Assembly (NCBI GenBank): GCA_000708835.1
Contig: DF237129.1
Coordinates: 1-64,000 of the forward strand
From: Klebsormidium nitens
Lineage: Eukaryota; Plantae; Klebsormidiophyceae
Length of the DNA stretch: 64,000 nucleotides
Direction: 5' to 3'
Within the stretch, counting starts at the first letter, position 1. Every line of letters begins with the position of its first letter. The position numbers were made by a program, and so were the translations under genes. The notes beneath the pieces are model-generated. The model was not told the origin of the DNA and searched no databases. It saw only the letters and a list, made by a program, of their open reading frames with translations. Of this stretch, positions 21,045-42,890 are shown one piece after another.

Positions 21045-24000
21045 ATGGAGCAGCAGAATCCTGGGAGGTTTACTGAAGCGGCATCATTTTCGGGGAGGGA
21101 TATGGGGGCCGCTTCGGGTCTGAGGACGGCTGGGGTGGGTTGGAGCAAAGTGCGACTCTCCAGTGACCATGTTTCGTGGGACCGCCGCCAGCCAGGGGAC
21201 GAAAGTCTGCTCAGTTTCGCCCTGGAGGTGGTTCCAGCTTGGACTAAGCTTGTGGACCAGAAATTAGGGTTGCGAAGACATCAGCAGCCATCGCCAGCAG
21301 ATTGCGCTGGCAGTATAAGTAGAGTGCCGCGTAGGAGACGGGGACGAGGTGTTAGCTTAGTGGTAGACAGTAACTCCGCTTTTGACCTCGCTTCGCCACT
21401 GCTTCAGGAGGCTGAGATGAGCTGGGAAAAGGAAGAGGCAATTGAGGTAGCGGAACTGACACAGTCGTCAAAGTTAGATTCTGAGAATAGGGAAGCAAGC
21501 TCTACTGCGATTGTAGACGAGGATGTAACTGATAGAGAAGGTCTGGGGGCCCAAATTTTGAAACGAGGAGCGCGTTGGCGGGATGTACTGTCAAGGAACA
21601 GTGTCCAGCTGCTCAGGCAGCTTCCAAGGTTGAGTCCTGAGGCGGCCAACACGTTTAAGCACTTGTTCTCGGGGGCGGTAGCAGCAGCGGTTGCTAGGTG
21701 AGTCAGCAACTAGGGAATGCCTTTGAATCTCTCTGACGTTACAGCTTGTCCCGATCAAGCTGCCAGTTTCGGTGTCACCTAATATAGACTATTTCCACTC
21801 ACAAACAGACTGACTAACTTACACTAATGTTTTCACTAAAAGTAGCAGGTTGCTCGGAACTAGCTGTAAGAGCAGCTTTTTATCATAGGGCGTACTCTGA
21901 ACTTACTTTTTGAAAAATCGTTCCTGCATTTATTTGTTTGCCTTGCCCTTTCCACTGATGACTTAGTGATTTATGCACTAGTAGTCAAGCACAAGCAAAG
22001 GTGGCAGCTGGGACTTTGTTGGCTTCTGCGAGTCTGCAATGAAGCAAGGAGAGTTGTGGCACAAGAGAAGGCAAAGCTCCGAGCCTGGGTGCAAGGTGCA
22101 TGCATCTGTACAGCTCCTTAACAGAATTGAGATTGGTTGCAAGTCCTGTCTTTTATATGGTGGTGATCGCTTCAGATTCCCGACTTTCTTTCAACAGTTG
22201 CTGTTGGAGTCACGAACCAGCACAAGTGCTGTTTTCATATGCAATGGGGTCCATGTGACGATTTGAAATGCTGAGTGCTACTTTTGAATCTTCTTTTTCA
22301 GCTCCTCGGTTAACTCCCACGGTGGCGAATGGTGAAAGTTGTGTTACATAAGCAGGCAGGCAACGCACTGGGGGAAAGAATAGCATTTTTCATGCTTTGC
22401 TTTTGCAGAGCGTAATGTCGCGCACACCGACACCGTTTAAGACAGTATTCTCCCTCTTCTCCCTGACCTTTTCGAGCCAGCTCTTGGACCAAAACCACGA
22501 TCCAGATGGACACCCTGGACTGACACCATTTTCCGTTTCACCGCAGGACCTCAGTTGCCCCCCTCGAGCGCGTCAAGGTCGAGTACATCATCCACGACGT
22601 GCAGACGAGCGTGCCCGAGACCGTCTCCCGCATTCTCCAACACGAGGGCGCGGGGGGCTTCTGGAAGGGGAACGCTGTCAACATCCTCAGAACGGCCCCA
22701 TTCAAGGCCGCCAATTTCTACGCGTTTGATTTGTATCGGAAGGCGTTTCTGAAAAGAAGGGGCCAGCGGGACCTGACGAACTGGGAGAGGATCATGGCGG
22801 GAGCGGCCGCGGGGGCGACCGCCACTGTCGTGTGCTTCCCGCTCGACACCGTAAGTAACCCCTGTGATCACCTTCTGTTCTTGTTTGAATCCCGTTCTGT
22901 AGCTCGATATTTCGTTGGTAGACGGGTACAACGACTTTCAGTCCCTTTGAATGATTGGACAGCTGGTAAAGCGGCTGTTGGCTGCTGCCATCAAGACCAT
23001 GTTTTAAACAACCTTGTTCGTTGAGAATAGCTTGAGAAGATTGTTGAAAGGCTTCTCTGTTTCGTCAAAGTGCACGCGTTCACTCGAGGCCATACACGGG
23101 TTGTTCGATACCTGCAGTCACGTACAAAGATCCGTACCAGGAGACCCTTTGAAAGAGCTGTAGAAAGAGGCCTTCCGTTTCTATTGTGTTTCTCGTTCAG
23201 ACTTTGGTGAATTACTTCTTTTTCAAGTGTGGAAGTAATGTACCTTCCTTTCAGTGTTCAATCGAGATCGATTGGAGATTCCAAACGAACCTGTATGTCG
23301 GATTGAGTCTGAACGGGAAACACTGCGAGACAGATGTGTTATCTTCCTGCAACTTGCGGTTGAGGGCGTCTGTGTAATAATCAGCATAGATTATAGTCTT
23401 CGCTGTTGCGATTCCTGAGCTGGTGAAATTTGCAACCGTGCCATTCAAAGAGCCGGCAGTCTCTGTAACGGGCCTGCATGACGTTCCCAGATTCTGGCAT
23501 ACGGCGTAATTTTCTTAACAGAAGCTTTCTTGCCCTGCAGGTACGTACCCGCTTGATTGCGCGCCCCGACCAATTTCGGGGCGTGATTGACTGCTTCTAC
23601 CAAGTTATCACGAAAGAGGGGCCGATCTCGCTTTACCGGGGGCTACTCCCGGGCATAGTATCGATGGCGCCTGCGGGGGCCGTCTTTTACGGGGTCTACG
23701 ATCTGCTGAAAGCACAGCACCTGAGGTAGGCCCAATAGCGACCCGTTTTCCGACTCCTCTTTACTTTCTTCGCGCCAGTCCGCTGTCAATGCCTCCGCAG
23801 GTTGAGCTTTTCTGATTTTGTGAAAAGTCGATGACTCCCGACGTTTGGCGGTTTTCTTCTCTTCCGACGCGTAATTTTTGAACAGACTGAAAGAGAAAGG
23901 CCGCTTGAGAAGCAGGTTCAGAACGCACTTTTGATTAGGTTGAGGTAAGATGCGGTTTTCTTTTGCGCTTCTTGTATGATATCGGCGGCTTATGCGATGC

Positions 24001-26249: not shown

Positions 26250-29200
26250 TTAGACGCCGTACCCGGGGGGAACGTAACCATTATTCTTGCAGTGGGGGAA
26301 AGTGTTGTCCGGGGGCAAGAAGCCGTCGCAACCCTGCTGATCGCAGCACACGTAGCGCCCCTGGGGGTCGCTGTTGAACCAACAGCGCACGGGGAAGGAG
26401 CCGGCGGCGCCCGCCCCGCAAACACCTGTAAACGCGGGTTTGATTTGATTTCAACTGCGGGGTTGATGTCGAGCTGTCAGCATTCGAGTTTGAAGCATTC
26501 GACTTCAAACTGCGAAAGTTACAAGGTCGTTTCGGGTGTCCAGCGTGGGACAAGTTGGCTGATATTTTCCGGGTTTCAACATCCGACTCTCGCCTTAGCT
26601 TCAGAAATGTTTGTGACACTCCATCATTCCAGTAATACTCCGCGTATGCTGACATCAGCAGCTACGTTGGAAATACTTGACCAGCGACGGATCCCGTCTG
26701 AAAGGATGGAAGGAGTCTGCGTCCTACCAATCAGTCTCGAGAAACCCCTCGGCTATAATGCTTCACATCGTCGGTCCAGCAATTTCTTGACTCCAAAGTC
26801 GACCGTTTATCCCCCGGGGTAATTGCGAAAGAAGGCCTCGCGAGGGTAATTGGCGAAAATCCATGTCCCCAATCCATTTTGCGATGGGAAGTCGTCTTCT
26901 GCGCTTTGGAACGGCCAGAACGAGACGAACCGTATGTAGCGCCCCCCTGACAAGATGGGTTCCATTTTTCAGTGGGCCGCTGAAACTCGGAACAACGATA
27001 TTGTATACAGAGGCGTGATCTCAGCCGCCCAATCGGAACCCACATCGAAAAACCCACGTCGGGGACCTCAGAAAGACCAAGACTGGGTTGTTACCTTGGT
27101 CTCCGCTGGGGGGACTGGGAGACGCCGGGGGGGTCGGGTTTGCCCCAACTCCATAACCTGGCGGAACGTAACCGTTGTTCTTGCAGTGGGGGGTCAGATT
27201 GCCCGCATTAAACCCGTCGCAGCCCTGGTTGTCGCAGCACACGTAGCGCCCCTGAGGGTCGTTGTTGAAATAACAGCGCGTGGGGAAAGAGCCTGCCGCG
27301 CCGCTCCCGCAAACCCCTTAAACACGCACAGAAACAACGGTTAAGAAGCGTGGTTAAGCCTGGGTTAGTCGCCTTCTAAAGAGCGGACATGTTTACAACC
27401 TGGCGTAGTGTCGGTTGACAAAGCTTGGTCAAATAAGGAAGCAACAAATGCAAAAAGAGTCGGGTTCGATCAGGTGCACATTGGTACAAGATTTCATACA
27501 ACCCAACCTGAGCTGCATTGCAAGGTTGAATGATCAAACCAGCAACATGATAGAGCGCTTCGCGCTATCAGAAGTTTGGAATTGAACGATTCTACCTTGT
27601 AATGAAGACTGGCGTGCAGCCGTGGTTGGCTCTAGGAAATTGCAGATTGCATCGACGCGATTTACGAGGACCGCTTAAAAGTCAAGAGGTGAAGTTTCAA
27701 TCAGATTCATGACAAGCCTATGAAGCGGCGAGCGCTCAAGTCTAGTCCACCAGAGACCAATCTGCAAATGTCTTCTTCGAGAAAACGAAAGAGAAACGAG
27801 GTGCCCGTTCCGCATTCCTCGTCAAGCTGGACCTTCTTTTCTCAAGACCACCGTTTCGAAATCCAGATCAATGTCGCCCCATAAGAGCATGATGCTCCGA
27901 CAACCTGCCATCCTCTTCTCACGGGTTGATTCAACTCAAAAAAAGATTCCTAAGTTTTGACTATGCGGGGTCGAATGCCTACCTTGGTTACCGGTGGGAG
28001 GAGTCGGAGGCGTTGAGGGGGCGGGGCCGGAGGCACCGTTGTTGGGCGGCAAGTAGCCGTTGTTCTTGCAGTGGGGCGTCAGGTTGTCCCCGTTGAATCC
28101 GTCGCAGCCTTGATCGTCGCAGCACACGTAGCGCCCTTGAGGGTCACTGTTGAAATAGCAGCGCGTGGGGAAAGACCCCGCTGCGCCGCTCCCGCAAACC
28201 CCTACAACACGGGGAGAAAGCACGATTAACAAAGGCTGGTCGTTTTCGCTTTATTGGACTTTCTGCCGGGTGGATGGGCCGGTTCTTTGCTGGGTTCCGA
28301 CCTAACCTAATCTAGAACCCTACAGACCCCAGAGAGAGACCTGAGAGGGTCGTTATTGAACCAGCAGCGCGTCGAATAAGGGCCCGCTGCGCCGCTCCTG
28401 CAGAAGTCTGCGGAAAATCCTTTCCTTGCCATTCCGCCGGCAGGCTCCGCCGCTGCGGCAGTCCCCTACCCGTGTTCCGTGTCAGGATAGTTTAATACAA
28501 GACGAAAAAAACCCTTGAAAGAGTTCGTCGCCTTCGTCAAACCTCAGAATGAATGTAAGGATACCCGGAAAGATAGCCCTGGTTAGACAAGCCTACACTC
28601 TGTCATTTGAGACTAGTGGGCATGAGTTGGATTGTGACAAAGTTTTTATGGAAAGCTAGTCTGATGTGGCGAAAAACCGGACCAAGCAGATGACCCAAAA
28701 GTAAGCGACTGAAATAGGCGTGGGATGCGGAACCCAAAAGTGTGTGACACAAAGCTCTTGAAGCCGAAACGCTTCAACTGCTGAAAAACGAGAACTAGAG
28801 CAACGGGGTCGGAAAGTTCAATGCACCAAGATTTTGATAGAGTCCCCGCATAAACGACGGACCAGCACTACGTGAACCAACGAAAGGCATAGCGCTCGGA
28901 AAGAGATTTCCACAGGTGAAATCGTGCAAGGCACCGACCTCGAGGGAGTGCCCAAAGAAACGGAAAAAGGAGAAACGGAAACGGAACCGGAAAAAGGAAA
29001 ACACACCCTGGTCTCCGGAGGGGGGTGGCGGCTGGCTCGACGGCTGGCCCGACGCTTGCGGCGGGTAACTGTTGTTCTGGGGGATGGACGTCTGTCCGTT
29101 GCAGAGCGGGGTGTTACCGTCGGGTCCATAAGGCCCGCAGTAGTTCTCGCAGCACAGGTAGTGCGCTCCGTCCTTGTACAAGCACCCGGCTTGCGGCGAG

Positions 29201-32200
29201 CACGACTCTAGAGCAAGAACAGGGTTTGGCGTTAACGAAGTCCCAGGTTGAGTTTGAGGTGGTGGCGCGAGGGCGCTTGTCAAAAGTGATAGTCCTTGTA
29301 TACGCATCCGGTTTGCGGCAGACAACACGCGGACACAGAAAGGGTTTGGCGTTAACTAGGCCTGGTTAAGGTGATAGTACGAGCGCGCACGTCGAAAGTG
29401 GAGGTCGTTGTATGCGCATGATGCGGTTGCGGCGAGCGCAATTCTGGGGCGTGTGGTGCAAAAAGGGTTTGGCGTTAACCAGGCCCGGTTAAGGTGGTGA
29501 TCCGGGCGCCCACGTTAAGAAGGATGAGAAGTATAAAGAAGCATTCCTTGATGCATTCGGTCAACAGGAGCTTTCTGCAAGAACGTGATTGCAGGTTTTC
29601 TGTGTAAGAAAGCGAGGCCATCGTTTTCTGATAAAACGAAGCTCATCTCTTTGACAGGAGTTGACTGCTTTAGTGGTTATCCTGGCCAGACAGCAAGTCA
29701 ACGGTGAAACGACATTTTGTACAACGGTCCCTTCCGGCTTCAGAGCACACTTTCAAGAAGGAAGTAAGACATCTACCACTTCGACGACAGTCCCCTCCGT
29801 GGGCTGCTCGAGATTGTTCGCAAGATAGAAGTTCACACGATTTTGCCGCAGGGCGCTTTCAATCTTTGTCCGTGAGCCCACAAACGAAGGTCGATCAGGG
29901 AGTAGCTGCAGAAGCAAGAGAACAGTTATCTGCGACAACTAGAGATGGAACCCAGTTGGACCTACTTCATTTTGCAGATCAGCGTAGCGAAGTGCTGTTG
30001 AGGAGACGGAGTCCACTGCCACGGGTAGTGTCAGATGGAAGAAAAGCGGGCCTGCTGTGAGACTGACTGCAATCTTGCCAAACCACTCGCTAACGGAGTT
30101 ACACCCGAACGATATCGGTGCGGCCAAAAACAGCCGCTTCTGCGGCACGTTGGAACCAGACACTGATTCAGGGAGAAGGAATCTTTTGAAAAGGTAGTGT
30201 GACGTTCGCACAGATAAAAAAAGCGTGTTTGCGTGCTCACCGAAGAAGTCGGATCCGGCAAGTGGGCCAGTCGTGTTTCCAACGGTGGATTGCACGAAGG
30301 GAGTAGTCTTGGGAGGAGAAACCCTGCTCAACAATGTAACACCCTCAGGATGAAGATACAACCAGGCTGAGATAGGTTAATGCTCAAGGACGGGGTTGAT
30401 CTGGGAGTTAGGGTGGGTATGGTGAGGAGCGCGTGAGGTTGTATCGAGGGTTTGTGTGTCCTTCCCGTTCCCGTTGTGAATCTCAACCTGGCTCAATTTC
30501 CACTCATCTCGATCTTGCCAATCACGTCAAAGTACTCAAATCTGGACCTTGTGCCAGGTTCGGATTCTGATCCTTCAGCTCAAACTGAAGAGACGAAGTT
30601 TGGCGAAGGCTCTCTTAAAACGAAAGAACGTCGATGTGATAACGCCTGGGCGGCTCAGCAGACTTTGGATGCTGTGCAAGCTTTCTTCAGCTTATGCTGT
30701 TTAATTTGAAAAACATGACTTTATCTGACGCGCAATCTGGCATAAATCAGGTCGACAACCTAGTCGGCACCCTTCGAAGAGCGGGTTCGTACCGGAGACT
30801 TTCGAAGAACGAGCTAACCAGTTCTGCTTTCTGGGCGGCTGCGATACACAACAGGCGCGTCCACTTAAAGACTCGAGAAGCATGTGCTATGAGTCCCCAA
30901 AATCTGACCGCTCTTTCGCCCACAAACACTAGAGGAGGAACGTCAACCTGCGGTCTTTTCAGCAAAGAGAATTCATCGCCTCTTTCCCTTCGCCTCTCAG
31001 CCAAAAGCTGTCAATCATAACGCATGTTGCGGGGTGCTGTCCCCCTCGCCTCTTCTCGGAAACGGATTTGATAGCAATGGCTGATCAACCATTGTTAGAG
31101 TCACCCCCAGCTCACTGCCCCCTCTACCACGTCTACAGGAAGAGGCGCGTGGAAAGTTCCGACCTCACAAGCAGACTCGAGCGGCATACTTGAAACGAAA
31201 AATGCCAGCTGTTCGCGTTACACTCACGGGATGTTGCAGAACGTCCCTGTAGAGAACGGGCCGCAGTCGCAGGTGGCGGCGACGGGTGTTTCCTGTTGTC
31301 CGAGGATGGGGCTGCTGCCGTAAGTCACATACTTGCACATCCCGCCGTTCTGGCACGGGTTGGGGTCGCATGGGTCATCGCCTGCAAGGGTGCAGTTCGC
31401 ATTCGTGGAATTGGCTTAAAAGGTTTCATGTAAGTTAAGTTGTAATGCATACGAGGTCTCTTGACTTGAATTATCCAGGCCTCGAAGGCCTCGAAGTCTA
31501 CGTCAGCACTGGGGGTCCAGGATCAGGGGTGAAGAACTGTTCCATCTAGACATGTGTATTATGACTTACTCGTTTAGAATGGGTGTCTGAGCGGTTGGAA
31601 AAGATGTCTGTCAGAAGATGTATGTCAAAAGGTTAAAAGGACGGATTAAGCTGGGAAGTCAGAAACCCCGTGTCTTCAAGCCAACATGATTGACAGCAAG
31701 TCAGGCCAAAGCACGAGCAAACGGGGAGTCTTGAGCATGGGAGCATCAGAACAAGGGCAAACTTGGTGCTGCAGCCCGAAAGGGATTCTGGCTCTTGAAG
31801 ACCGTTTGTAAGCTTCTTTCAAGTACGAGGTTTCTGCCCTTCAGTCTCAGCTCTTGAGCCTCCTCTTGCTGCCAGCTCTCTCAACTTGAGCGACAAATTC
31901 TCTCCCAGAAGCTTAACATCCAGGCATTTTAAGCATACCTGGGGGGCAGCTGTAGTGAAAACTTGGAGAGGCAACTTGGGAATTCCAGTTCCCCTAAGGA
32001 AGCCGGATCGAACATAACATACGAAGTATTAGCTACAGAATTGAAGGCCTAGGACCTCTTGAAAAGCAAGGATACTAGGTGGCCTCCTTGCTTTCGATCA
32101 GGATATAAGGATCGCAGTGCCTAGGATGGGAATCCATAGAAGATTTTTACGAGCCACGTACCTGGAATGTAGCAATACGTCTGCGAATAGGTTGGGGTTT

Positions 32201-33522
32201 CGTTGGTCAGCGCCACAGATGGGGCGTTGCATTGGGTGCAATTGGCCACAGTGATAGGGCCCATAGTATAAGCTCCTGCAGTGGTGCATGTGTTTCCTGC
32301 AACAGTAAAACACAAACAGAAGAAGTTATAAAGAGTTGTAAGCAGTCGCAACATTATGCAAAAGTCGCAAACGTTGCTGCTTTCAAGTGGATGCAACATG
32401 ACGTACAGCTCTATTCTGCATGGGGGCGTATTCATGGCTGCTTAAAGTGGGCATCAGAGGAAGAACTGTAATTACAATCATCTGAAGAACAATCTGCAGA
32501 GGAGCATCACCCTCGCGGCGTCTTGGAGCAGCTAGGGTGATTGTTTACAAGTAGGATAAACAATCCAGATGGCAGTACACATATCACCCCAGACTTTTCA
32601 GCGAAGATAACATGGAGCACGCAAACCACTTGCTTCTCCGTCAGACGCCACGCAACCAGCACCAGCGTCCAACAGAGTCTTTCTTACTCAAAACAATATG
32701 GTTTAGAAGTCGCTTGAAAGCCTTTAGCTGGCACATTGTGCTGGTTCATTGAAGGTAGTTCAACATGGTCATAGGTGGCCACTTTGATGGGACTTCCTGC
32801 AACCTAAGAAGCTCCAAAGGCTTCTGAGGGCACCGTCAGTCTGTAAGTGATACCTCCCCACAGTGGACTTTTTGTGAAGTCATGAGCATCATTCAGAGCT
32901 GGTGTTTTACAAGGGCCCAAGGGGCTCTCAGCTTCGCCTGGACAATCCAAAGCCCCCACCTTCTTCTGACCCTGAAACTCATATGAGTCCCTCCCCCCCA
33001 CCAACCAATGGGAGGCCGCCAATCAGCTACAGAATGACCTACTCCAAGTGCCAAAGCCTGGTAGCTGGTACCAACAATGAATGATGCCTTGCCCTTCTGT
33101 ACACAAACTGCCCAATCCGCCAGACTCAGTTCAGATCGCCATAGGTGCATGCTTGAGCCACGACCAGGAGGACCAGCGGAACGAGTAACTGACGGAGCCT
33201 GCCCAACTTGGTTCTGGATTCCAATCCAGGATCCCAAGGAGCAGACGTCCTACCCTCACTCGGGCTTGCATGTCTACAAAAACCACGTTGTTCAATCAAA
33301 TCGAAATGGGGCACCATAAGGTCGCTCACCAGACCCACAAGGGTTGCCAATGCAGGGGTCTGCAAAGCAGGAGAATCCCCCGCCTCTGCGGTTTGGTACG
33401 ACGTTGTACCCAGACGGACAGGAGAGCCCGGGGTAGGGACCCCAGAGAGGAAATGCATCCGTCCTTGCCGCCAGGAAAAGCGACAGGAGCAGGAGCTGGG
33501 ACAACATTCTGAGCCCAGCCAT
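26250..33522 (-). CDS. Secreted Cys-rich modular protein, copy A (signal peptide, 2 EGF-like units, 4 six-Cys modules, Pro-rich linkers), 460 aa, 8 exons
   Basis: Exons 33522-33330, 32296-32162, 31381-31228, 30323-30241, 29207-29007, 28201-27983, 27316-27095 and 26425-26250 total 1383 nt, in frame. Signal peptide MAGLRMLSQLLLLSLFLAARTDA; EGF-like DPCDPNPCQNGGMC...CDCGPFSTGTFC; repeated module VCGSGAAGSFPTRCYFNSDPQGRYVCCDDQGCDGFNGDNLTPHC. Confidence 0.88.
28345..28407 (-). pseudogene. Fossil half-module (pseudo-exon) in intron 5 of copy A
   Basis: The acceptor ttccgcag is followed by DFCRSGAAGPYSTRCWFNNDP, which aligns with the first half of the 6-Cys module, then similarity is lost. The counterpart in copy B (37812-37876) has a TGG>TGA stop. 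Confidence 0.75.
29207..29520 (-). repeat. About 120-bp triplication spanning the exon 5 acceptor of copy A
   Basis: AGGGTTTGGCGTTAAC occurs at 29221, 29341 and 29464, each next to a degenerate copy of the exon 5 start. Copy B has a single unit near 38735. Confidence 0.8.
30362..30491 (+). mobile_element. Degenerate copy of the G-rich mini-element in intron 3 of copy A
   Basis: Core ggacggggttgatctgggagttagggtgggtatggtgaggagc, bounded by inverted CCAGG(C/T)TGAGAT at 30362-30373 and 30480-30491 (11/12). Confidence 0.5.
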
Positions 33523-35712
33523 TGGGGCGCCAAAGGAGGTTTCTTCTAGGGAGCTGTAGGGAGTGAGAGAATGAGGGATTAATGAAGGGATGCTTCTTTG
33601 ATCAATCCTTGTATCCTGTGTTTTAGTATTACTTGCTGCATTCCTGCATTTCATTCATGAGGCGGCGGGTTTGCAAATGCTGAGCTAGCTGTGCTAGCAG
33701 CTGCAAGGACTGCTGCAAGCACATGATGATGCATGATGGCCCATGGGGCGGGCCGGGGTACTGAGAACATCATGCACATGTACCTAATGTGTACAGTTGA
33801 GTCTTTTAACCTACATACCTACATATTATTATTACGTACTGGTACCCGCTTTACCTAGGCCGCTCCTCGATCGCTGAACAGTGCACACATGGTGGTGACC
33901 GCACATATGACACATATCATGTACTTGTTATGTACAAGTTTACCGTTCCAAAGTTACGGCAAGCTGACAGGTCTGACCGTCTGGTTAGAAGTCCTAGTCC
34001 GGCGTCCTCCGTAGTCTGCGTCTACGACGGGGATTCCTGACGGTTCTTATAGCTAGGCAACCAAGAGCTTTTATAGTATTATGTACGTGCTGTCCTCCAC
34101 GTTGATGTCAACACTTTGGGTGGTACATGTACTTCTCTCGCGACCTCTTTGTCAGTGTTCTCACGCTTCCACGCTGTCACGCTGTTCCCTGCATGGCAGC
34201 ACCTGCCTTGCGTCGATCTCATATGAGCTTTTGAAGGTTTTAGGGTGCTCAGAACAGCCCCATTGAAGGCTGACCGCGACAGTGGACAGGGGGGGAGGGG
34301 TCTCAAAGTGCCCGTCGGCGATCCGGTTACAGCTGTAAAACTGTTTAGACACCACGCCATGGCCTCTAGCTCATGTGGCCTCTCGTTCTCATGGGCACCG
34401 GGCATGGGCACTTTGGGATCACCACAGACTGAGTACACTTTTTCCCTTTATCATATGGATGCTTTTCATATCATATACCGGTATGCATGCTTTGACTCTG
34501 CTTGCAAATTGTTCGAGTAACAGAGTAACATGGCATGATGCTTGCAGAGTGATCCTCCTGGTCAGCTGTTTGGGGGGGGATTGGGCGCAGAATCCTGCAG
34601 GGACATAGATACCTTGTGGCAGAGTAGGATACAAGCTCCTGAGAGGGCCCTTCGACTTTGTTCCCAGTTACATTGATAACTTCAGCTGACATTGTGCAGC
34701 ATGCTTGATGCCAGTGGCGTTTATATCAGCTCATTGCACTGGCCATCGTAAATCTTGGCAGTTTTGTCTTCATGGATACATTATTTACTGCATGCCTGTG
34801 TTTCTGACCAAACGTGTTGACTGCGACATTTACACAGATTCAGCATCAACATAATGCTGGGCATGTTTTTCGTTTATTTTGATATCATCAACCTGAAAGG
34901 CTCCCGGTGCAGCATGGATAGCGCCTGGCCGGGGTTAAAATAGTCAAGCCGGTTATATGCGGTCAGCCACAATGATGGCTCGAATTACCCTGATTTTGCA
35001 ATCACCACGCATATAACAGTTCTGCCTTAGCCTTTGGGTTATGTCACTCAGTCAGTCAGGAGTCCTATGAGTCCACTGCCCCATGACCTGTCATAAAAGC
35101 GATAGCCGCAACTGCTTTTGAAGCTGTAAGCGCGCTGCACAGCAACACGACGGTCTGGTAAAATCTGGCCGTGTTGGCATTGAAGACCAACTTCACTGGG
35201 AAATTAGCGAAGATCCTGTCATAGTGTACACTAGTTTGACTTTGTGTCCAAAATTGCTAGCTTGACATCCTAAATTAGTGTCACTACACAGACCCACAGC
35301 CTCAAAACTCACTAGCAAAACCTTGAGACGTGGTAGGCAATCTCAACTCCTCAAAAAGGTGCCCTCCCGTGCCTTTTGAAGGCAGTAAAACCTTGAAGTT
35401 GTGTAAACCCAAAATTCAGAAGTAAGTTCTGACGGTTTCCGAGTTCGCAAATGCTGGACCTCAAGAGCTTGCTAAGGCTGAACTCAGATCGAACCCACAC
35501 CCGCTCCGAAACCTCTAAGCGGAACCTACACGGCGGTTAGCTTGCAGTGATACTACGCTCGCGACGAGCCTAATGCTTTTCGTGAAGGTGTGAACTGGCA
35601 CTCGGCTACTCGGTCTAAGGCAATCGTTGCAAATGACTAACAGGGCCGTTGGCTAAAGTACACTCTCGAGTATACTAACACCGAGGGTTAATATACTCAT
35701 TCAGATCCAATA

Positions 35713-38700
35713 TTAGACGCCGTACCCGGGGGGAACGTAACCATTATTCTTGCAGTGGGGGAAAATGTTGTCCGGGGGCAAGAAGCCGTCGCAACCCTGC
35801 TGGTCGCAGCACACGTAGCGCCCCTGGGGGTCGCTGTTGAACCAGCAGCGCACGGGGAAGGAGCCGGCGGCACCAGCCCCGCAAACACCTGTGAAAACCG
35901 TCAGAGTAAGAGGGGGGTTTCCGTTCAGCAATAGCACTGCTGGGCAAATGCTTATCCCTTTGTCTGTCCCGTCTGCGTCTTGCCCGATCTATGTGGGAAG
36001 AATGTCAGCAAAAGTCTCAGGGAAAATTGTCACGAGAGCGATTGAGGCCACCAAAGGAGACGATAGGGCTTTTACAAAGATACCTTGACCGTTTGTGAAA
36101 CTTCAATAAGCAACCAAGCAGTCCCTGCTGCGCCTCTCTTGTACTGAATTCCAAAGTTGATCAGGCTGTCCAGCCCTCGATCTAGAGCTGCGAGACTTTG
36201 CAGAGTCGTTCCGGCTCCCTCCAGCGCGGGTCGAATCTGCTGAGGGATTGCGGGTTCGACATCCAACTCTCTCCAAAAGCATTTAAGACGCTCTTCACTA
36301 CTCGCCGAGTTTGCGGTGATTTGACATCAGTAGCAGTTCCGAGGGTTGTTGAGCCAGCCACTGATCCTGTCGGCTCCTTGAAAAAGTCGTCTTTCGCGTC
36401 TTCGACTTTTCAGGACGAGACAGACCGCAAGGAGCGCACCCCTGACAAGACGGGTTCCACTTTTCAGGGGGGCCGTACTTAAGCTCAGAACGACAATACC
36501 GAAAACGACAACATATCCTTAGTCGACAACCGAACCCACATGGATGCACATGTTGGGTTCTTCTCAACATTTTTTTCCTCCTTTTTCCAGCATTCGACAA
36601 CAGAACAAAGTACTACCTTGGTCTCCGCTTGAGGGGGTGGGAGGCGCCGGGGGGGTCGGGTTTGCCCCAACTCCATAACCCGGGGGAACGTAACCGTTGT
36701 TCTTGCAGTGGGGGGTCAGGTTGTCCCCATTAAACCCGTCGCAACCCTGGTTGTCGCAGCACACGTAGCGCCCTTGAGGGTCGTTGTTGAAATAGCAGCG
36801 CGTGGGGAAAGAGCCTGCCGCGCCGCTTCCGCAAACCCCTACAACATGGAGAGAAACTATGGTTAAGAACGGTTGGTCATCTCTTGTTAGGCGCCTTTTG
36901 CAAAGCGGACCTGTCTACAGTCCGGCCTAGTGTTGGTTGACAGCGCATAGTCAAGAAAGGAAGGAAGGAATCAAAAGAGTTGGGTTTGATCAGATGCAGA
37001 TTGGTGCAGAACTTCAAGACGCAGTAACGTCGTCAAAGCGCTCAAAAATCTCTACCAGAAGTCTAAAAAATTCAACAAATCGACCTTAAACTTAAGACTG
37101 ACGTGCAGCCGGTGGTTGAAGCTGCAAACTTGCAGATGGCATCGACGCGGACAGCTTTGGAGTTAACAAGAGACGAATCAACCATAACCATGTTATTACT
37201 ACAAAGCAACGAGCGTTCAAGTCCATACGGCCAAAATCCGTCTGCAAAATCTCTGAGAGGAAACGGAAGATAAACGAGGTGCCCGTTACGCGTTCCTATG
37301 CAAGCTGGGCCTTTTTTCTTCGGAATCCAAATCAACGTCGCCCCTTAAGAGCATGATTAATCAACGAGATTGCAAAGGACTGCCATCCCGTTCTCACCGG
37401 GAGAATCGATCTTTCAGAAGCTTTCTAAGTTCGACTGTACAGGTCGCCTGCCTACCTTGGTCCCCGGTGGGAGCAGTCGGAGGCGTTGGGGGGGCGGGGC
37501 CGGAGACACCGTTGTTGGGCGGCACGTAGCCGCTGTTCTTGCAGTGGGGCGTCAGGTTGTCCGCGTTAAAGCCGTCGCAGCCCTGGTTGTCGCAGCACAC
37601 ATAGCGGCCCTGAGGGTCGTTGTTGAAATAGCAGCGCGTGGGGAATGAACCCGCTGCGCCGCTCCCGCAGACCCCTTCAACACGGAAAGAAACCACGGTT
37701 AAGAAAGGCTGGTCGTTTTCGGGTTATTGGACTTTCTGCCGGGTGGATGGGCCGGTTACTTGCTGGTTCCAAACTGACCTGATGTAAAGCCTAAAACCCT
37801 TGAATAGACTTAAGAGGGTCGTCATTGAATCAGCAGCGAGTCGAACAAAGGCCCGCTGCGCCGCTTCCGCAGAAGCCTGGGGGAAAACGTTCCATTGCCA
37901 TTCCGCTAGAAGGTTCCGACCGCTGCGGCACTCACCAAATTTTCCAAAGTTTGGAGTTACTCGTGTTCTCTCCCAATCAGCTTAACCTCGGTAGAGCGTC
38001 AACGAAACCCTCAGAAAGGTTCGTCGCCTTTGTCGAACCTCAGAAGAGATAACGAGGAACAGATTCTCGCCTTGTTCGGACAAGCCCATGTCCTCTGTCG
38101 TTAAAGAGAGGTGGTCTTGAGGAGGATGGTGACACAAGATTCTCAAAAAGTCAAATCGATGTGACGAAAAGTCGAGGCAACCAAGTTGCCTAGAACAAAT
38201 AGATGCCTGAAAAAGGTCTGAGCTGGCGTTTGGAAGCGGAGAGTCCGTGCTATTGGATGGGTCTTGAGACAACGCCTCAACGTAAAAGTGCGGAATGCTG
38301 ACAACGGAAGATGCAGCTCATACGAAACGTCGAATACATCGAGGATTCTGACAAAGTCTCCGCAGAAAAGACGGACCAGCATGGCATAGCGCTCGAGAAT
38401 GAGTGGCTGTGAGCTAGACGCAGCGCTCAAAATGAGTGTCGATAAGGGGATACTTGAATGGCATAATCCAAGAAAAAAAGCGTCGAAAGCGAAGAGAAGA
38501 AGAGAGGAAGAAAACGCACCCTGGTCTCCGGTGGAAGGTGGCGGCTGGCTCGGCGGCTGGTCCGAAAACTGCGGTGGGTAACTGTTGTCTTCGGGAATGG
38601 ACGTCTGTCCGTTGCAGAGCGGAGTGTTGCCGTCTGGTCCGTAGGGCCCGCAGTAATTCTCGCAGCACAGGTAGTGCGCTCCGTCCTTGTATATGCACCC

Positions 38701-41700
38701 GGCTTGCGGCCGGCATAGTTCTGGGAAACAACGGGGGTTTGGCGTTAACCCGGCCCGGTTCAGTGGTCATCCTAGCGCGCTTTTTGAAAGTGAGGGGCAC
38801 AAAAGGCGCGTTCCAGGGTACTGCGGTTGGTCAACAGGAGCATATCTCGGTAGAGAAACCGGAGATGCCAATTTTTGGTATGAAAAAGCGAGACCATCGA
38901 TTTCTGATAAAACAAAATCTGAAGTCCTAGAAAGGAGTTAAATGCTTGAATAAGCCATTCCCGGGTGGAATTTCTGCAATGACCGATTGCCTTCGTAATA
39001 GTATAGAAGAAGCATTAAGCGACAGTTTCTTTACTGCGTCGTCAGCGCGCGTCACAGGCGGCTCGAGAATGTTCGCAAGATGAAAGCTCATCTGCAAGAG
39101 CGCTTTCAACCCTTGAGCCCAGAACCAATTTTCCATCAAATTGTAGCTGTAGAAGAAGTAGAACACTTTAACAACGACAACTAGAGATGGACTCCATCTG
39201 GACCGTGCTCAGATTTGCGTTTCAACGCAGCGGATTGCCATTGAGCAGACAAAATCCACTGCTATGAATAGCGTCAGATGGACAAAACAGCGGGGGGTGA
39301 GATGGACTGAAAACGTATCAAGAAAACTCGCTGCTGACGTTACACCCGTGTTTGCTGATGTGACAGTGACCTACGCACCATGTACTTTCTGCTGCGGCAC
39401 AACGAAACCAAGTTCGAGGAAAAGGAAACTTGTACAAAAGGATAGCGACGTTTGAAAGCAATGCTGGTTTGGGTGCTCACCGTAGTAGTCCGGATTGGCA
39501 ATTGGGCCAGTGGTGTCGCCAACGGTGGATTGCACGGTTGGACTAGTGCCGGGAGGAGAAACCCTGCTCAAAATTAGAACCGAATTTCAGGTTAAGATTA
39601 TACAGCCAGGTTACAAGTAGGTCCGTGTCTGGGGACGGGTGGGTTTACTTTGGTGGTTAAACTGGGTGCGGGCGCGGAGCACATAGGTTTGTCTCAGGGG
39701 TATGGTTTAGTGGGTCCTCCTGGTGTTGTATGCATCTTAACCTGGCTAAACCGAAGCTACACAAGGGACCTTCCCTTGCTCGAACGTGGACTGATACTCC
39801 TACTCACAGGAATCTATTTACAGCTCACCCACATCCCTATAGGTCTCGGAACAGCTGACGACACATTTAAAAGCTTTCAGGATACTTGAGAATGAGCCGT
39901 TCACCTTCTTTGATAGAAAACCATTCTTCACGAATCTGGATCTCCGCGGGTAGAAAAACCATTCTTGGAAAGGAAGTTGAGAAGATTTGGCAAAGAATCG
40001 AGAAAGTCGATGAAGCAGCGCCTCTGGGTGGGGTCAGCAGATCACGAAGGCTGACAAAGGTCTCTTTTGCATGACGGCGCTGTGAAAGCTTTGCTTCAAA
40101 CCATGTTCAATGTAACCAAGAATCGCTTCAATCCTTCAAGAGCACCTTCCAGTCCAGGTTCGACTGACGACTCTTCTCAATAACCGAGTTCTGAGGCGGG
40201 TTTTGATTGTAGTTCACCGAAAACGAGCCAGGCTTTGTTTTCAGGCAGCCGCACTTTGAATTGAGGCTTCCTTCATAAAATTGGCAGAGGCGCTTTACCG
40301 CTTTCAGGTAATGACACGCTCCGTGTTTGAGTTCTGAATGATCATTTGCTCTTCAGAAATGTTAGTGACCATCAGAATTTGGTTTTGCAGGGCAAAGAGC
40401 TAGAAGTCACCACTTCCTTCCCTTAGCCTGCCAGCCAAAAGCTCTCAACTACAGCGCATGTTGCGAACTGCTGTAACGCTCGCTCCTTTCTTCGAAGAGA
40501 AAATTGAAGTCAGCAATCGGTCATGAGCCGGTTGGAGACATGCACCCGGCTCATTGAACACGTCCAAAAGGAGTAGCCGGTCAAACAATCTGTTCTTACA
40601 GATAAACTCGAGCCCCATCCTTAGGAACGAACTTAGCAGAAACGCAGGTCGACTTTCACTCACGGGATGGTACAGAACGTCCCAGTGTAGGCGTCCCCGC
40701 ACTCGCATGTGGCGGCGACGGGTGTATCCTGTTCTCCAAGGATGGGGCCGTCGTAAGTCGCATACCCGCACGTCCCGCCGTTTTGGCATGGGTTGGGGTT
40801 GCATGGGTCATCGCCTGCAAGGGTGGAGTTTGCATCAGTGAAATTGTGTATTACGCTTTTGTGTAGGTTAAAATGCAAAGCATACAAGGTCACCGACTTA
40901 TCCAGGCCTCGGATTTGACCAGCGATGGGTCACGCCTCCAGAAACTAGGGTAAAAGCACCGTTTTGTCTAAAACAGGTGTATGTCGAAAGATTGGAAAGA
41001 TGGATGGAGCGGGATAAACCCACCGCAGGGCTTCAGACTTTCATGTCGTCGATTGAATGTAAAGAATAGCACTCAGGCCAAAATGGTGAGAAGACAAGGA
41101 GTCTGAGGATTGGAGCATCAAAACACGGGCAGATTGGTGCCACAGCCTGAAAGGAATTCTGGCTGTTGAAAACCGTTTGTGCGCTTTTCCAAGCACGGGA
41201 TCCCTGCCCTCCGGTTACAGCAATTCAGGCCTACTCTTGCTGCTGACTCTGTCAACTCCAGCAACAATCTCAAAAAGTTCCACAAGCCAGACCTCCAGGC
41301 ATCGAAGCATATGGCTGCAGCATAACAAACTTCAAAAGACAACTTGCAAAATTCCATAGCCCCTATGGAAGCCGAATCTTACATAACTACTAAGTGATAG
41401 CTACCGGAGATTGGGCCTAGGGCCTCTTGAAAGGCAAGGAAACTAGATGGCCTTCTTGCTTTTGATCAGGATACAAAGATTGCAGTGTCTAGGATGCGAA
41501 ATCCTTACAAGACAATCACGAGCCACATACCTGGAATGTAGCAATACGTCTGCGAATAGGTTGGGGTTTCCTGGGTCAGCGCCACAGATGGAGCGTTGCA
41601 TTGGGTGCAATTGGCCACAATGGTAGGGCCCAGAGTATAAGCTCCCGCAGTGGTGCATGTGTTTCCTGTGACAACGAAGACAATCCAAAATCTGTTAGAA

Positions 41701-42890
41701 GAGTTGCAAGCAACTGCCCGAGTGATGCAATTGTCGCCAGATTGCTACTTTCAGGTGATGCAACACGACGTACAGCTATTTTCTGAATAGTGGCGTAACA
41801 GTGGCTGCTTCAAGTGGACATCAAAGGAAGAACTGTTTATAACCATCTGAAGAACAATTTGTAGAGGAGCATCACCCTCGCGGCGTCTTGGAGCAGCTAG
41901 GGCGACTGTTTACAAGTAGGACTGACAATCCAGGTGGCAGTACACATATCACCCCAAGCTTTCAACCCCAAGCGAAGGTATAATGGAGCACGCAAACCAC
42001 TTCTTTTCTGTCAGACGCATTGCAACCAGCACCAGCGTCCAGCGGAGTCTTTCTGACTCCAAACTTTATGGTTCAGAGGGACCTTGAAAACCACACAGCC
42101 TTGATTGGGCACATTCTGTTGGTAACCGAAGGTGATGCGACATGGTTAAGGATGGCTACTCTGACAGGACTTCCTGCAATCTGAGAAGCTCCAATCAGTC
42201 CAAGGGAACCGTCACTTGTGAGTGATACCCCCCATACTGTCTGTGACCATTTTCAGAGATGACCCTCTATAAGGGCCCCGGGGGGCCTCAGCTTCCTCAA
42301 GTGATTCCAAAGGCCCCCCTTTCTTCGTTCAACCCTGAGTCTTCGTTCAACCTCCCCTCCCACCCCCCCCTTCTATCCCCCCACAATAAGGGGGGGTACC
42401 AGGTACAGTACGACGGTACCCTGATTGCACTGCCTTCTCTAAAGAAAGAAACGCTGCCTGCATTTCTTTGCAGAATCTGCTCAATCTGCCAGACTTGGTT
42501 CGTAATGCCATCAACGGCAAGAACAGGAAACTAGCGGACTGAGTAACTGAGTAAATGAGTCAACCCAAAATGGTTTTGAACGTAATGCCGGATTCCAAAG
42601 AGCAGACTTCCTACCCTCACTCAGCCTTGCATGTACATGTTTGCAAGTACCACATTCTTCAATCAAATTGAAATGGGGCACCATATTGGTCGCTCACCAG
42701 ACCCACAAGGGTTGCCAACGCAGGGGTCTGCGACGCAGGATCTCGAGTCGCCTCTTCGGCCTGGTACGATGTCGTATCCAGATGGGCAGGAAAGGCCGGG
42801 GAAGGGACCCCAGAGAGGAAAGGCATCCGTCCTTGCCGCCAGGAAAAGAGACAGGAACAGGAGCTGGGACAGCATACTGAGCGCAGCCAT
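35713..42890 (-). CDS. Secreted Cys-rich modular protein, copy B, 459 aa, 8 exons
   Basis: Exons 42890-42698, 41665-41531, 40814-40664, 39563-39481, 38720-38520, 37674-37456, 36838-36617 and 35888-35713 total 1380 nt, in frame. All splice sites and Cys spacing are conserved with copy A while introns diverge. Confidence 0.88.
39588..39747 (+). mobile_element. Degenerate copy of the G-rich mini-element in intron 3 of copy B
   Basis: Core ctggggacgggtgggtttactttggtggttaaactgggtgcgggcgcggagc. CAGGTTAAGAT at 39588-39598 is the perfect inverse of 39734-39744. Same intron position as in copy A. Confidence 0.55.

What the first reader, a model, noticed from the sequence alone, without database searches (positions are those of the whole stretch)
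26250..42890. Tandem pair of secreted EGF-plus-knottin-like modular proteins with no family I recognise
Seen in sequence: two intact, colinear 8-exon genes (460 and 459 aa) with a signal peptide, two EGF-like units (ADPCIGNPC..., DPCDPNPCQNGGxC...CxC...GTFC), a Thr/Pro linker and four 6-Cys modules separated by Pro-rich spacers. There is no transmembrane segment or hydrophobic GPI tail. Established knowledge: DPCxxNPCxNGGxC is the typical start of Notch-type EGF repeats. In plants, EGF-like repeats are mostly known from receptors such as WAKs and vacuolar sorting receptors, not soluble multi-domain proteins. Inference: a lineage-specific extracellular glycoprotein (wall, mucilage, adhesion or defence) with Hyp-glycosylated linkers. 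This is the best candidate for a new system in the window.
Basis: partly seen in the sequence, partly recalled or inferred. Interest (0 to 1): 0.75.

Follow-up and report, generated by a model that had tools for sequence, protein, structure and literature searches.

The report
Klebsormidium secreted EGF plus six-cysteine-module proteins
Two neighbouring genes of the land-dwelling green alga Klebsormidium nitens encode secreted proteins made of two EGF domains and four copies of a small six-cysteine domain that matches no described family and was found only in this genus; what it binds is untested.

Summary
There are two colinear minus-strand 8-exon genes of 460 and 459 aa. All introns are GT-AG, and the A/B comparison shows purifying selection (dN/dS 0.35 overall, 0.07-0.24 on the six-Cys modules).

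The window is Klebsormidium nitens. Gene B is identical to GAQ84199.1 (KFL_001800070). Gene A is GAQ84198.1 (KFL_001800060), whose public model carries a doubtful 54-aa N-terminal extension. Both are public but named only "hypothetical" or "EGF-like domain-containing" protein.

EGF2 is a true EGF fold (Z about 6, rmsd 1.1-1.4 Å over whole solved EGF domains). The C-C-CC-C-C modules have no Pfam, PDB-sequence or fold match, although the predicted model is confident (pLDDT 86). A profile search of 1.84 billion proteins found 31 hits, two of them spurious. Every named hit is K. nitens or K. subtile.

At least 16 K. nitens proteins were hit by the paralog query; most carry the module. It comes in three subtypes and also sits on four proteins with other N-terminal parts.

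The most likely role is a multivalent wall or matrix-binding "beads on a proline-rich string" glycoprotein. That is inferred, not shown. "Knottin" topology could not be tested.

This scan has already reported the same family at other loci of this genome (s1-299410, s1-313253, s1-313246, s1-290849). Interest is moderate.

The parts
26250..33522 (-). Gene A (KFL_001800060 / GAQ84198.1), 8 coding exons, 460 aa from the MAGL start. Exons: 33522-33330, 32296-32162, 31381-31228, 30323-30241, 29207-29007, 28201-27983, 27316-27095, 26425-26253; stop 26252-26250.
   Evidence: Exon model with GT-AG introns and no in-frame stops. It equals residues 55-514 of P0047.
35713..42890 (-). Gene B (KFL_001800070 / GAQ84199.1), 8 coding exons, 459 aa. 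Exons: 42890-42698, 41665-41531, 40814-40664, 39563-39481, 38720-38520, 37674-37456, 36838-36617, 35888-35716; stop 35715-35713.
   Evidence: Exon model. All exons are 100% identical to P0039 at contiguous positions.
33454..33522 (-). Signal peptide of A, about 23 residues with predicted cleavage after ...RTDA. B has the equivalent at 42822-42890.
   Evidence: The hydrophobic maximum is at residue 1 (KD19 1.7-2.0). The full-length model has a helix at residues 2-20. The family alignment starts at this Met in 12 of 20 members; 7 carry longer N-terminal extensions and one lacks a recognisable signal peptide.
40664..40814 (-). EGF unit 2 of B (exon 3). A has the equivalent at 31228-31381. It is a Notch-type EGF with a long C3-C4 loop.
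   Evidence: Pfam EGF scores 22.2 bits (B) and 20.3 bits (A) against a cut-off of 21.5. VIA-align gives Z 5.6-6.1, rmsd 1.1-1.5 Å over entire solved EGF domains, mapping to model residues 110-161. Foldseek matches Notch1 EGF arrays at E 5e-5.
41531..42758 (-). N-terminal Cys pair plus EGF-like unit 1 of B, split by intron 1 (end of exon 1 and all of exon 2). A has the equivalent at 32162-33390.
   Evidence: Six Cys with spacing C-x4-C-x5-C-x18-C-x2-C-x18-C. Conserved across the family. pLDDT is 81-90 from about residue 80 to 160. No Pfam hit and no separate fold match, so it is EGF-like by pattern only.
39481..39563 (-). Exon 4 of B, 83 nt, a Thr/Pro/Val-rich connector entering in phase 2 and leaving in phase 1. 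A has the equivalent at 30241-30323.
   Evidence: It is the fastest-evolving exon (dN/dS 1.09). In the model it forms strands with pLDDT about 70-83 next to module 1.
38520..38720 (-). Module 1 of B (beta subtype, C-x5-C-x9-CC-x3-C-x11-C) plus a Pro-rich spacer, in a phase 1-1 exon. A has the equivalent at 29007-29207.
   Evidence: It forms a separate, well supported clade from modules 2-4.
35716..37674 (-). Modules 2, 3 and 4 of B (alpha subtype, C-x11-C-x11-CC-x4-C-x11/12-C). Each lies in one phase 1-1 exon: 37674-37456, 36838-36617, 35888-35716. A has the equivalents at 28201-27983, 27316-27095, 26425-26253.
   Evidence: dN/dS 0.07-0.20. AlphaFold2 model pLDDT 85.8, with a helix at 5-9 and four strands. 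No PDB match.
28346..28405 (-). Relic of a further alpha-module exon inside intron 5 of A. B has the equivalent at 37815-37871. The acceptor and the first ~60 nt are kept, then homology stops at the same point in both genes. B also has an in-frame TGA.
   Evidence: tblastn of the exons against the window, DNA alignment with exon 6, translations.

Best explanation
These are two paralogous members of a Klebsormidium-restricted family of secreted, acidic, disulfide-rich modular proteins.

Shown:
- Intact genes under purifying selection.
- An N-terminal signal peptide, a genuine EGF domain preceded by an EGF-like unit, then four independently folding six-cysteine modules (one beta, three alpha).
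- The modules are joined by short proline-rich spacers that are predicted to be disordered.
- Each module is one phase 1-1 exon. The alpha modules are the most conserved part.

Inferred: the protein is exported into the cell wall or extracellular matrix. The Pro-rich spacers act as stiff stalks, probably hydroxylated and O-glycosylated. The aromatic-rich, non-cationic modules act as repeated binding units. One molecule could then hold several copies of a repeating wall ligand (a polysaccharide or another wall glycoprotein) and cross-link or decorate the matrix. The EGF pair would provide a protein-interaction or spacer head.
For: - Gene structure and identity with public proteins.
- Purifying selection concentrated on the modules: dN/dS 0.07-0.24, against 0.44-0.84 for the EGF exons and 1.09 for exon 4.
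- Secretion features, no TM or GPI tail, mature pI 4.2-4.5, module net charge 0 to -3, and 5-8 aromatic residues per module of 47-57 residues.
- The full-length model shows confident domains separated by disordered linkers at residues 240-255, 314-327 and 385-402.
- EGF2 fold match.
- The alpha module also occurs in proteins whose N-terminal parts look unrelated in sequence, and these also lack the beta module. They are P0001, P0013, P0015 and P0016. P0015 and P0016 carry weak DUF7933-like and LDLa-like matches. A related gamma module forms the extreme C-terminus of P0012, P0015, P0016 and P0034. A domain that moves between proteins like this fits a binding or anchoring role better than an enzyme or a toxin.
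- Module number varies from 1 to 5 between family members, and a dead module exon lies in intron 5 of both genes.
- Background: K. nitens is proposed to have a wall "glycoprotein framework" whose proteins are unidentified (PMC4927632), and a callose-containing flexible wall (PMC10762512).
Against: - There is no experimental evidence for secretion, glycosylation, location or any ligand.
- No similarity to any known carbohydrate-binding module was found.
- Aromatic content and conservation are only suggestive.
- I found no transcript evidence for these two genes themselves. Transcript-derived relatives exist only in K. subtile and in short Logan contigs.
- The Pro-rich spacers are short (12-20 residues) and only loosely resemble extensin or AGP glycomodules.
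Confidence: 0.5

Rival explanations
1. Polyprotein precursor. The protein is cut in the Pro-rich spacers and releases single knottin-like peptides that act as defence peptides or protease inhibitors, as in plant multi-knottin (TIPTOP-type) or Ib-AMP-type precursors.
For: C-C-CC-C-C framework; module 1 spacing resembles plant knottin-type antimicrobial peptides (my recollection, not tested). The units are repeated and separated by spacers ending in a recurring [ST]-G-x-Q-G motif just before each V-C-G. Module copy number varies.
Against: The modules are neutral to acidic, not cationic. The spacer motif has no conserved Asp/Asn or dibasic cleavage site across paralogs (SGSQG, SGPQG, SGFQG and others). 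It coincides with the phase-1 splice junction, which alone can explain part of it. Internal and terminal alpha modules are distinct and keep their positions across paralogs, unlike interchangeable cargo peptides. A conserved EGF head has no place in such precursors. No match to any knottin family or structure.
Confidence: 0.12
2. Cell-cell adhesion or signalling protein. The EGF pair is the working part, acting as a ligand or homophilic adhesion unit for filament cohesion, substrate attachment or mating. The six-Cys modules merely anchor or space it.
For: True Notch-type EGF fold. The EGF cassette is conserved across the 20 aligned family members. EGF1 of both genes and EGF2 of gene B carry the C2-x4-[ST]-C3 pattern that is the O-fucose site in animal EGFs (seen; the consensus is established knowledge).
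Against: The EGF exons evolve faster than the modules (dN/dS 0.44-0.84 against 0.07-0.24). The putative O-fucose Thr is not conserved (A has Met in EGF2; other paralogs vary). No receptor partner is known. Alpha modules also occur without the EGF cassette.
Confidence: 0.15
3. Not functional, or an artefact: decaying duplicates or an assembly duplication.
For: A dead module exon lies in intron 5. No direct transcript evidence for these two loci was obtained.
Against: Both reading frames are intact over 8 exons with canonical splice sites. dN/dS is 0.35 at dS 0.24. The copies differ by 14% at the protein level and have diverged introns, so this is not an assembly duplicate. Close relatives are transcribed in K. 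subtile.
Confidence: 0.02

Closest known systems
Notch/Delta/Factor VII-type EGF domains (Pfam PF00008)
   Same: Exon 3 encodes a six-Cys EGF with the D-P-C-x-P-N-P-C-Q-N-G-G-x-C start. The model superposes on entire solved EGF domains at Z about 6, rmsd 1.1-1.5 Å, 33-45% identity. Pfam EGF scores at or near its cut-off.
   Different: The C3-C4 loop has 20-21 residues (20 in gene B, 21 in gene A), longer than the roughly 8-12 residues I recall for typical EGF domains (not checked here). There is no calcium-binding consensus. Only two units are present, and the first is atypical (C4-x2-C5, long last loop) with no Pfam hit. The context is a soluble algal protein, not a receptor.
Knottins / inhibitor cystine knot peptides and hevein-type (CBM18) domains of plants
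   Same: Small secreted disulfide-rich domains with the C-C-CC-C-C framework, a beta-rich core, and sometimes tandem repeats. Hevein and similar modules bind polysaccharide through aromatic residues.
   Different: No sequence match to any such Pfam family or PDB chain. No structural match at Z 2 or more among 48,161 chains. Loops are much longer (11/11/4/11-12). There are 6 Cys rather than the 8 of hevein. The modules are acidic. The knotted connectivity was not testable.
Chimeric hydroxyproline-rich glycoproteins of green algae and plants (Volvox/Chlamydomonas pherophorins and wall HRGPs; chimeric AGPs and extensins)
   Same: Secreted proteins that join globular Cys-containing domains to Pro-rich rods or spacers, occur as large lineage-specific tandemly duplicated families, and build or decorate the extracellular matrix.
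   Different: The spacers here are only 12-20 residues, with mixed TPP/APP/QPPPP motifs rather than long SP3-5 or AP/SP repeats. The globular domains are unrelated to pherophorin domains. Hydroxylation and glycosylation are untested.
Exon-shuffled modular extracellular proteins of animals (phase 1-1 modules, Patthy's rule)
   Same: Each six-Cys module is one exon bounded by phase-1 introns, so exons can be duplicated or dropped without breaking the frame. Copy number varies from 1 to 5 between family members, and a dead extra exon is present.
   Different: This is a streptophyte alga. The EGF units are not phase 1-1 exons here: EGF1 is split by an intron and EGF2 runs from phase 1 to phase 2.

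Membership tests
EGF domain (PF00008) | Profile HMM score at or above the Pfam gathering threshold (21.5 bits) | tested here: inconclusive
   Exon 3 of B scores 22.2 bits and exon 3 of A 20.3 bits. Full-length B scores 19.6 bits. 11 of 20 family members hit EGF, best E 4.1e-6.
EGF domain (PF00008) | EGF fold: a two-stranded sheet plus a minor sheet, held by three disulfides | tested here: met
   Model residues 110-161 superpose on whole solved EGF domains at Z 5.6-6.1, rmsd 1.1-1.5 Å over 38-40 residues. Foldseek matches Notch1 EGF arrays at E 5e-5, prob 1.0. This applies to EGF2. EGF1 was not matched separately.
EGF domain (PF00008) | Six cysteines with C4-x-C5 spacing | tested here: met
   EGF2: C-x4-C-x5-C-x20/21-C-x-C-x8-C (x20 in gene B, x21 in gene A). 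EGF1 deviates with C4-x2-C5.
Knottin / inhibitor cystine knot | Cysteine framework C-C-CC-C-C | tested here: met
   All eight modules in the window, and 92 module instances found across 38 proteins of the family, have it.
Knottin / inhibitor cystine knot | Disulfide connectivity I-IV, II-V, III-VI, with the third bond threading the ring | not testable with these tools
   The structure tool returns no coordinates. Only secondary structure and pLDDT were available.
Knottin / inhibitor cystine knot | Sequence or structural similarity to a known knottin family | tested here: not met
   No Pfam hit at E up to 1. No PDB sequence hit at E up to 10 with the module profile. Foldseek best E 5.2. VIA-align wide search found nothing at Z 2 or more. 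A missing match for a 55-residue model is weak evidence.
Hevein / CBM18 chitin-binding domain | Eight-Cys pattern with a CCS-x2-G-x-CG core and a PF00187 match | tested here: not met
   Six Cys, different spacing, no Pfam match.
Hydroxyproline-rich glycoproteins (extensin/AGP chimeras) | Signal peptide plus Pro-rich glycomodules (SP3-5, or clustered AP/SP/TP) that are hydroxylated and O-glycosylated | tested here: inconclusive
   Signal peptide present. Mature protein is 14.4% Pro. Spacers contain motifs such as QPPPPS, APPTPPTAP and TPPAPPTP but are short. The modification itself cannot be tested in silico.
Unnamed Klebsormidium EGF + six-Cys-module family (GAQ79076.1, GAQ84199.1 and paralogs) | Signal peptide, SCPxGY Cys pair, two EGF units, zero or one beta module, two to four alpha modules, with the last alpha module ending about 10 residues before the C-terminus | tested here: met
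   Gene B is GAQ84199.1 and gene A is GAQ84198.1 minus its extension. The family alignment shows the shared architecture.

The most novel reading that the evidence does not exclude
The alpha/beta/gamma six-cysteine modules would be a new fold family of wall-binding (carbohydrate-binding-module-like) domains invented in Klebsormidiophyceae. The alga would use them as a general tag to tether secreted proteins to its wall, and as multivalent cross-linkers in the EGF family. They would then be the unidentified proteins of the proposed "glycoprotein framework" of this early land-adapted alga.
Probability: 0.3. Interest if true: 0.6.

Novelty: new variant of a known kind. Interest (0 to 1): 0.4.

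Why it matters
Klebsormidium is one of the earliest-branching streptophytes that lives on land, and the protein part of its wall is essentially unknown. This is a genus-restricted, expanded family that is tandemly duplicated here. It joins animal-style EGF domains to an orphan, well-folding disulfide domain through proline-rich spacers, and it is built from phase 1-1 exons.

That makes it a concrete candidate for wall-matrix proteins. It is also a clean example of extracellular domain invention and exon shuffling outside animals. If the module binds a wall polymer, it would define a new binding-module family and give a handle for localising or anchoring proteins in algal walls. If it does not, these remain ordinary lineage-specific secreted orphans.

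Tried and rejected
- **Pfam.** Scans of every exon and of 20 family members gave only EGF. The weak DUF3642 hits are noise.
- **PDB sequences.** Searches with the module profile, the K. nitens paralog P0003 and exon 5 gave nothing credible. The kelch-like designed protein and the antibody light chain hits are chance.
- **Fold searches of the module model.** Foldseek PDB, VIA-align wide and the VIA second look gave no match.
- **ESM Atlas.** Searched twice with no usable hit.
- **Rfam.** Nothing in the window.
- **Spurious profile hits.** P0026 is a bacterial surface protein with PKD, thioester and tandem repeat domains, matched only over an 18-residue stretch of the profile; I rejected it. P0030 (4233 aa) matched only a different 18-residue stretch of the profile; I judged it spurious from the hit table and did not inspect its sequence.
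- **Literature.** No paper in the library holds the gene identifiers, and none was found that describes the module. One search was badly framed and useless.
- I did not build or submit a joined spliced protein. Exons were searched one by one by reference. Full-length work used the public records P0039 and P0047 that the searches returned.
- **Hevein/CBM18 idea.** Considered from the CG..A.G...C...CC..GC.G look of the module and rejected on cysteine number, spacing and lack of any profile match.
Full report
**What is there**

Stop-to-stop translation of the minus strand and a self-comparison show two colinear units, A at about 26.0-33.7 kb and B at about 35.5-43.1 kb. Exons and parts of the introns align at 75-89% identity.

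I placed splice sites by frame and phase. Both genes have eight coding exons, all introns are GT-AG, and there are no in-frame stops.

Intron phases are 1,1,2,1,1,1,1. Each six-Cys module lies in one exon bounded by phase-1 introns. The junction falls in the Gly codon of a recurring ...Q-G|V-C-G... motif. EGF-like unit 1 is split by intron 1. EGF unit 2 is exon 3. Exon 4 is an 83-nt Thr/Pro/Val-rich connector.

**Are the genes real?**

An exon-by-exon Nei-Gojobori comparison of A and B gives dS 0.24, dN 0.08 and dN/dS 0.35. Constraint is strongest on the module exons (0.24, 0.20, 0.15, 0.07). It is weaker on the EGF exons (0.44, 0.84, 0.53) and absent on exon 4 (1.09).

All eight exon translations of B match protein P0039 at 100%, at contiguous positions with one junction residue between exons. 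P0039 is GAQ84199.1, "hypothetical protein KFL_001800070 [Klebsormidium nitens]". UniProt calls it "EGF-like domain-containing protein".

Gene A is GAQ84198.1 (KFL_001800060, P0047, 514 aa). Residues 55-514 equal my 460-aa model. The extra 54 residues come from an upstream exon (34405-34275) spliced to 33553. That extension would bury the signal peptide. The start of B and 12 of 20 aligned family members argue that the MAGL Met is the real start, but this is inference. Both genes also have an in-frame upstream ATG with no intervening stop.

So the window is K. nitens, and the splice models are independently confirmed by the public annotation. I found no transcript evidence for these two loci. 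Transcript-derived relatives do exist in K. subtile (Trinity ORFs P0005, P0037, P0042, P0043, P0048). The ORFs P0014 and P0034 fill short Logan contigs of 1376 and 1622 bp almost completely, which suggests intronless, transcript-derived sequence.

I did not build or submit a joined spliced protein.

**Protein features**

From:
- 38 Cys per protein: 2 + 6 + 6 + 4x6.
- 14.4% Pro in the mature chain.
- Mature pI 4.2-4.5.
- A hydrophobic maximum only at the N-terminus.
- No later hydrophobic segment and a hydrophilic C-terminus.

The proteins are therefore predicted to be secreted and soluble, with no TM segment and no GPI signal. The modules carry net charge 0 to -3 and 5-8 aromatic residues each.

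**EGF units**

Pfam EGF hits exon 3 at or near threshold: 22.2 bits for B and 20.3 bits for A, against a cut-off of 21.5. An AlphaFold2 model of full-length B, built on a 20-member family alignment, has mean pLDDT 71. The domains are confident. The spacers at residues 240-255, 314-327 and 385-402 fall below pLDDT 50.

Foldseek matches Notch1, Del-1 and DLK1 EGF arrays at E down to 5e-5. VIA-align superposes model residues 110-161 on entire solved EGF domains at Z 5.6-6.1, rmsd 1.1-1.5 Å and 33-45% identity.

EGF2 is therefore a true EGF. EGF1 is EGF-like by cysteine pattern and is conserved and confidently modelled, but it has no separate profile or fold match.

**The six-Cys modules**

There was no Pfam hit at E up to 1. 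A profile of the eight window modules found no PDB sequence at E up to 10, and the Atlas gave nothing.

The same profile was searched with HMMER against all 1.84 billion representatives. It found 31 proteins at E up to 1e-3. I set two aside as spurious. P0026 is a bacterial repeat protein hit only over an 18-residue stretch. P0030 was judged from the hit table only (4233 aa, one short stretch, E 7e-4) and not inspected.

Every hit that carries a name is K. nitens or K. subtile. The rest are unnamed JGI or Logan contigs, several of them single-exon read-through ORFs. A word search with the paralog P0003 listed at least 16 K. nitens proteins, most of them with the module.

An AlphaFold2 model of one alpha module, built on a 27-row alignment, is confident. 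Mean pLDDT is 85.8, with a short helix at residues 5-9 and four strands that carry C2, C3-C4, C5 and C6. Foldseek on the PDB (best E 5.2), VIA-align against 48,161 representative chains (nothing at Z 2 or more) and the VIA second look all found no match.

By comparison, the 40-residue EGF domain reaches Z 6 with the same tool. The blank is therefore mildly informative, but it does not prove a new fold. The knotted disulfide topology could not be checked because no coordinates are returned. "Knottin-like" rests on the cysteine framework alone.

**Family anatomy**

Pattern extraction and a tree of 61 modules separate three subtypes with strong support:
- **Alpha:** C-x11-C-x11-CC-x4-C-x11/12-C. 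These are modules 2-4 here.
- **Beta:** C-x5..11-C-x9-CC-x3..6-C-x10..11-C. This is module 1 here.
- **Gamma:** C-x10-C-x9-CC-x5-C-x10-C. This forms a C-terminal tail and is absent from A and B.

Internal alpha modules (...ADNLTPHC) form a moderately supported subclade. The last alpha module (...PPDNxFPxC) always ends about 10 residues before the C-terminus in the EGF family.

Alpha modules also occur in four proteins whose N-terminal parts look unrelated in sequence; these also lack the beta module. Two of them, P0001 and P0013, have no credible Pfam match. P0015 has a weak DUF7933-like match and P0016 a weak LDLa-like match.

Module number ranges from 1 to 5. In intron 5 of both A and B lies the 5' half of a dead alpha-module exon (28346-28405 and 37815-37871). 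It is truncated at the same point in both genes and carries an in-frame stop in B. It therefore predates the A/B duplication.

**How it most likely works**

Shown: a secreted-type, acidic, disulfide-rich "beads on a string" protein whose most constrained parts are the alpha modules.

Inferred: it is exported to the wall or matrix. The Pro-rich spacers are probably hydroxylated and O-glycosylated, as in streptophyte HRGPs (established knowledge, untested here). The aromatic-rich modules would be repeated binding units that give multivalent attachment to a repeating wall ligand. The EGF pair would be an interaction head.

This fits the modules' mobility between proteins, their non-cationic nature, and the published proposal of an unidentified wall glycoprotein framework in this alga (PMC4927632; wall background PMC10762512). 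I give it about 0.5.

Rivals:
- A polyprotein precursor of knottin-like peptides (0.12). This is weakened by the acidic charge, the position-specific module types, the lack of a conserved cleavage residue and the EGF head.
- An EGF-driven adhesion or signalling role (0.15). This is weakened by the faster evolution of the EGF exons.
- An artefact or pseudogene (0.02).

**Novelty**

The genes are already in GenBank and UniProt without a name. No paper in the searchable library holds their identifiers, and none was found that describes the module.

This scan has already reported the same family on other DNA of this genome: s1-299410, s1-313253, s1-313246 and s1-290849. Those notes reach a similar "binding tag" reading. 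I reached the family identity, the Klebsormidium restriction and the fold blank independently. I only partly tested the claim that the modules tag unrelated secreted proteins.

The finding is real and moderately interesting: an orphan extracellular domain family combined with true EGF domains in an early land alga. It is neither a new kind of system nor new to the scan.

Noticed in passing
window 34275-34405 and 33523-33553 (minus strand): The public model of gene A (GAQ84198.1, 514 aa) starts at an ATG in an upstream exon and splices (GT-AG) to 33553. This adds 54 residues in front of the signal peptide. Homology with gene B and most family members suggests a 5'UTR intron or a mis-called start. 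Both genes also have an in-frame upstream ATG without a stop (A 44 codons upstream of its start, B 31 codons upstream).
   Followed up: partly
window 28346-28405 and 37815-37871 (minus strand): Relic of a fifth six-Cys (alpha) module exon in intron 5 of both genes. The acceptor and first ~60 nt are conserved, homology ends at the same point in both, and B has an in-frame TGA. It was truncated before the A/B duplication.
   Followed up: yes
window 29236-29509 (minus strand, intron 4 of gene A): The ~45-bp stretch just upstream of exon 5 occurs twice in A, about 270 bp apart (A 29509-29465 and the start of A 29236-28997 both align to B 38778-38735/38749). This looks like an A-specific insertion or duplication inside intron 4. 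It also offers an alternative in-frame acceptor at 29294, which the public model does not use.
   Followed up: partly
gene A exons 1-2; gene B exons 1-2 and exon 3: EGF1 of both genes (C-GSGN-T-C) and EGF2 of B (C-QNGG-T-C) fit the animal O-fucosylation consensus C2-x4-[S/T]-C3. A has Met at that position in EGF2, and the Thr is not conserved across paralogs. I did not check whether K. nitens has a POFUT1-type enzyme.
   Followed up: no
window 42740-42760 (gene B exon 1): Gene B has an RGD tripeptide (..GRRGDSRS..) in the loop between the two N-terminal cysteines. Gene A has RRGGG there, so it is not conserved.
   Followed up: no
modules 2 and 3 of both genes (e.g. window 28070-28085, 37545-37560): An N-L-T sequon followed by Pro is conserved in internal alpha modules across the family (..ADNLTPHC..). 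In the terminal module it is replaced by PPDNxFP. It may be a position-specific N-glycan site or just a structural motif.
   Followed up: no
window 62055-62507 (+), 22599-23021 (+), 14569-15885 (+), 50729-51834 (-): Neighbouring ORFs carry ordinary eukaryotic domains: GT10 fucosyltransferase C-terminal domain, mitochondrial carrier, an L-PSP/RidA domain inside a long ORF, and KH domains. None has an evident link to the finding.
   Followed up: partly
P0016 (GAQ77602.1, KFL_000010510), not in the window: A K. nitens protein combines Cys-rich repeats resembling LDL-receptor class A modules (..CDGVKDCEDGSDE.., Pfam E 0.0017, below cut-off) with an alpha and a gamma six-Cys module. This is another animal-style extracellular module in this alga.
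   Followed up: no
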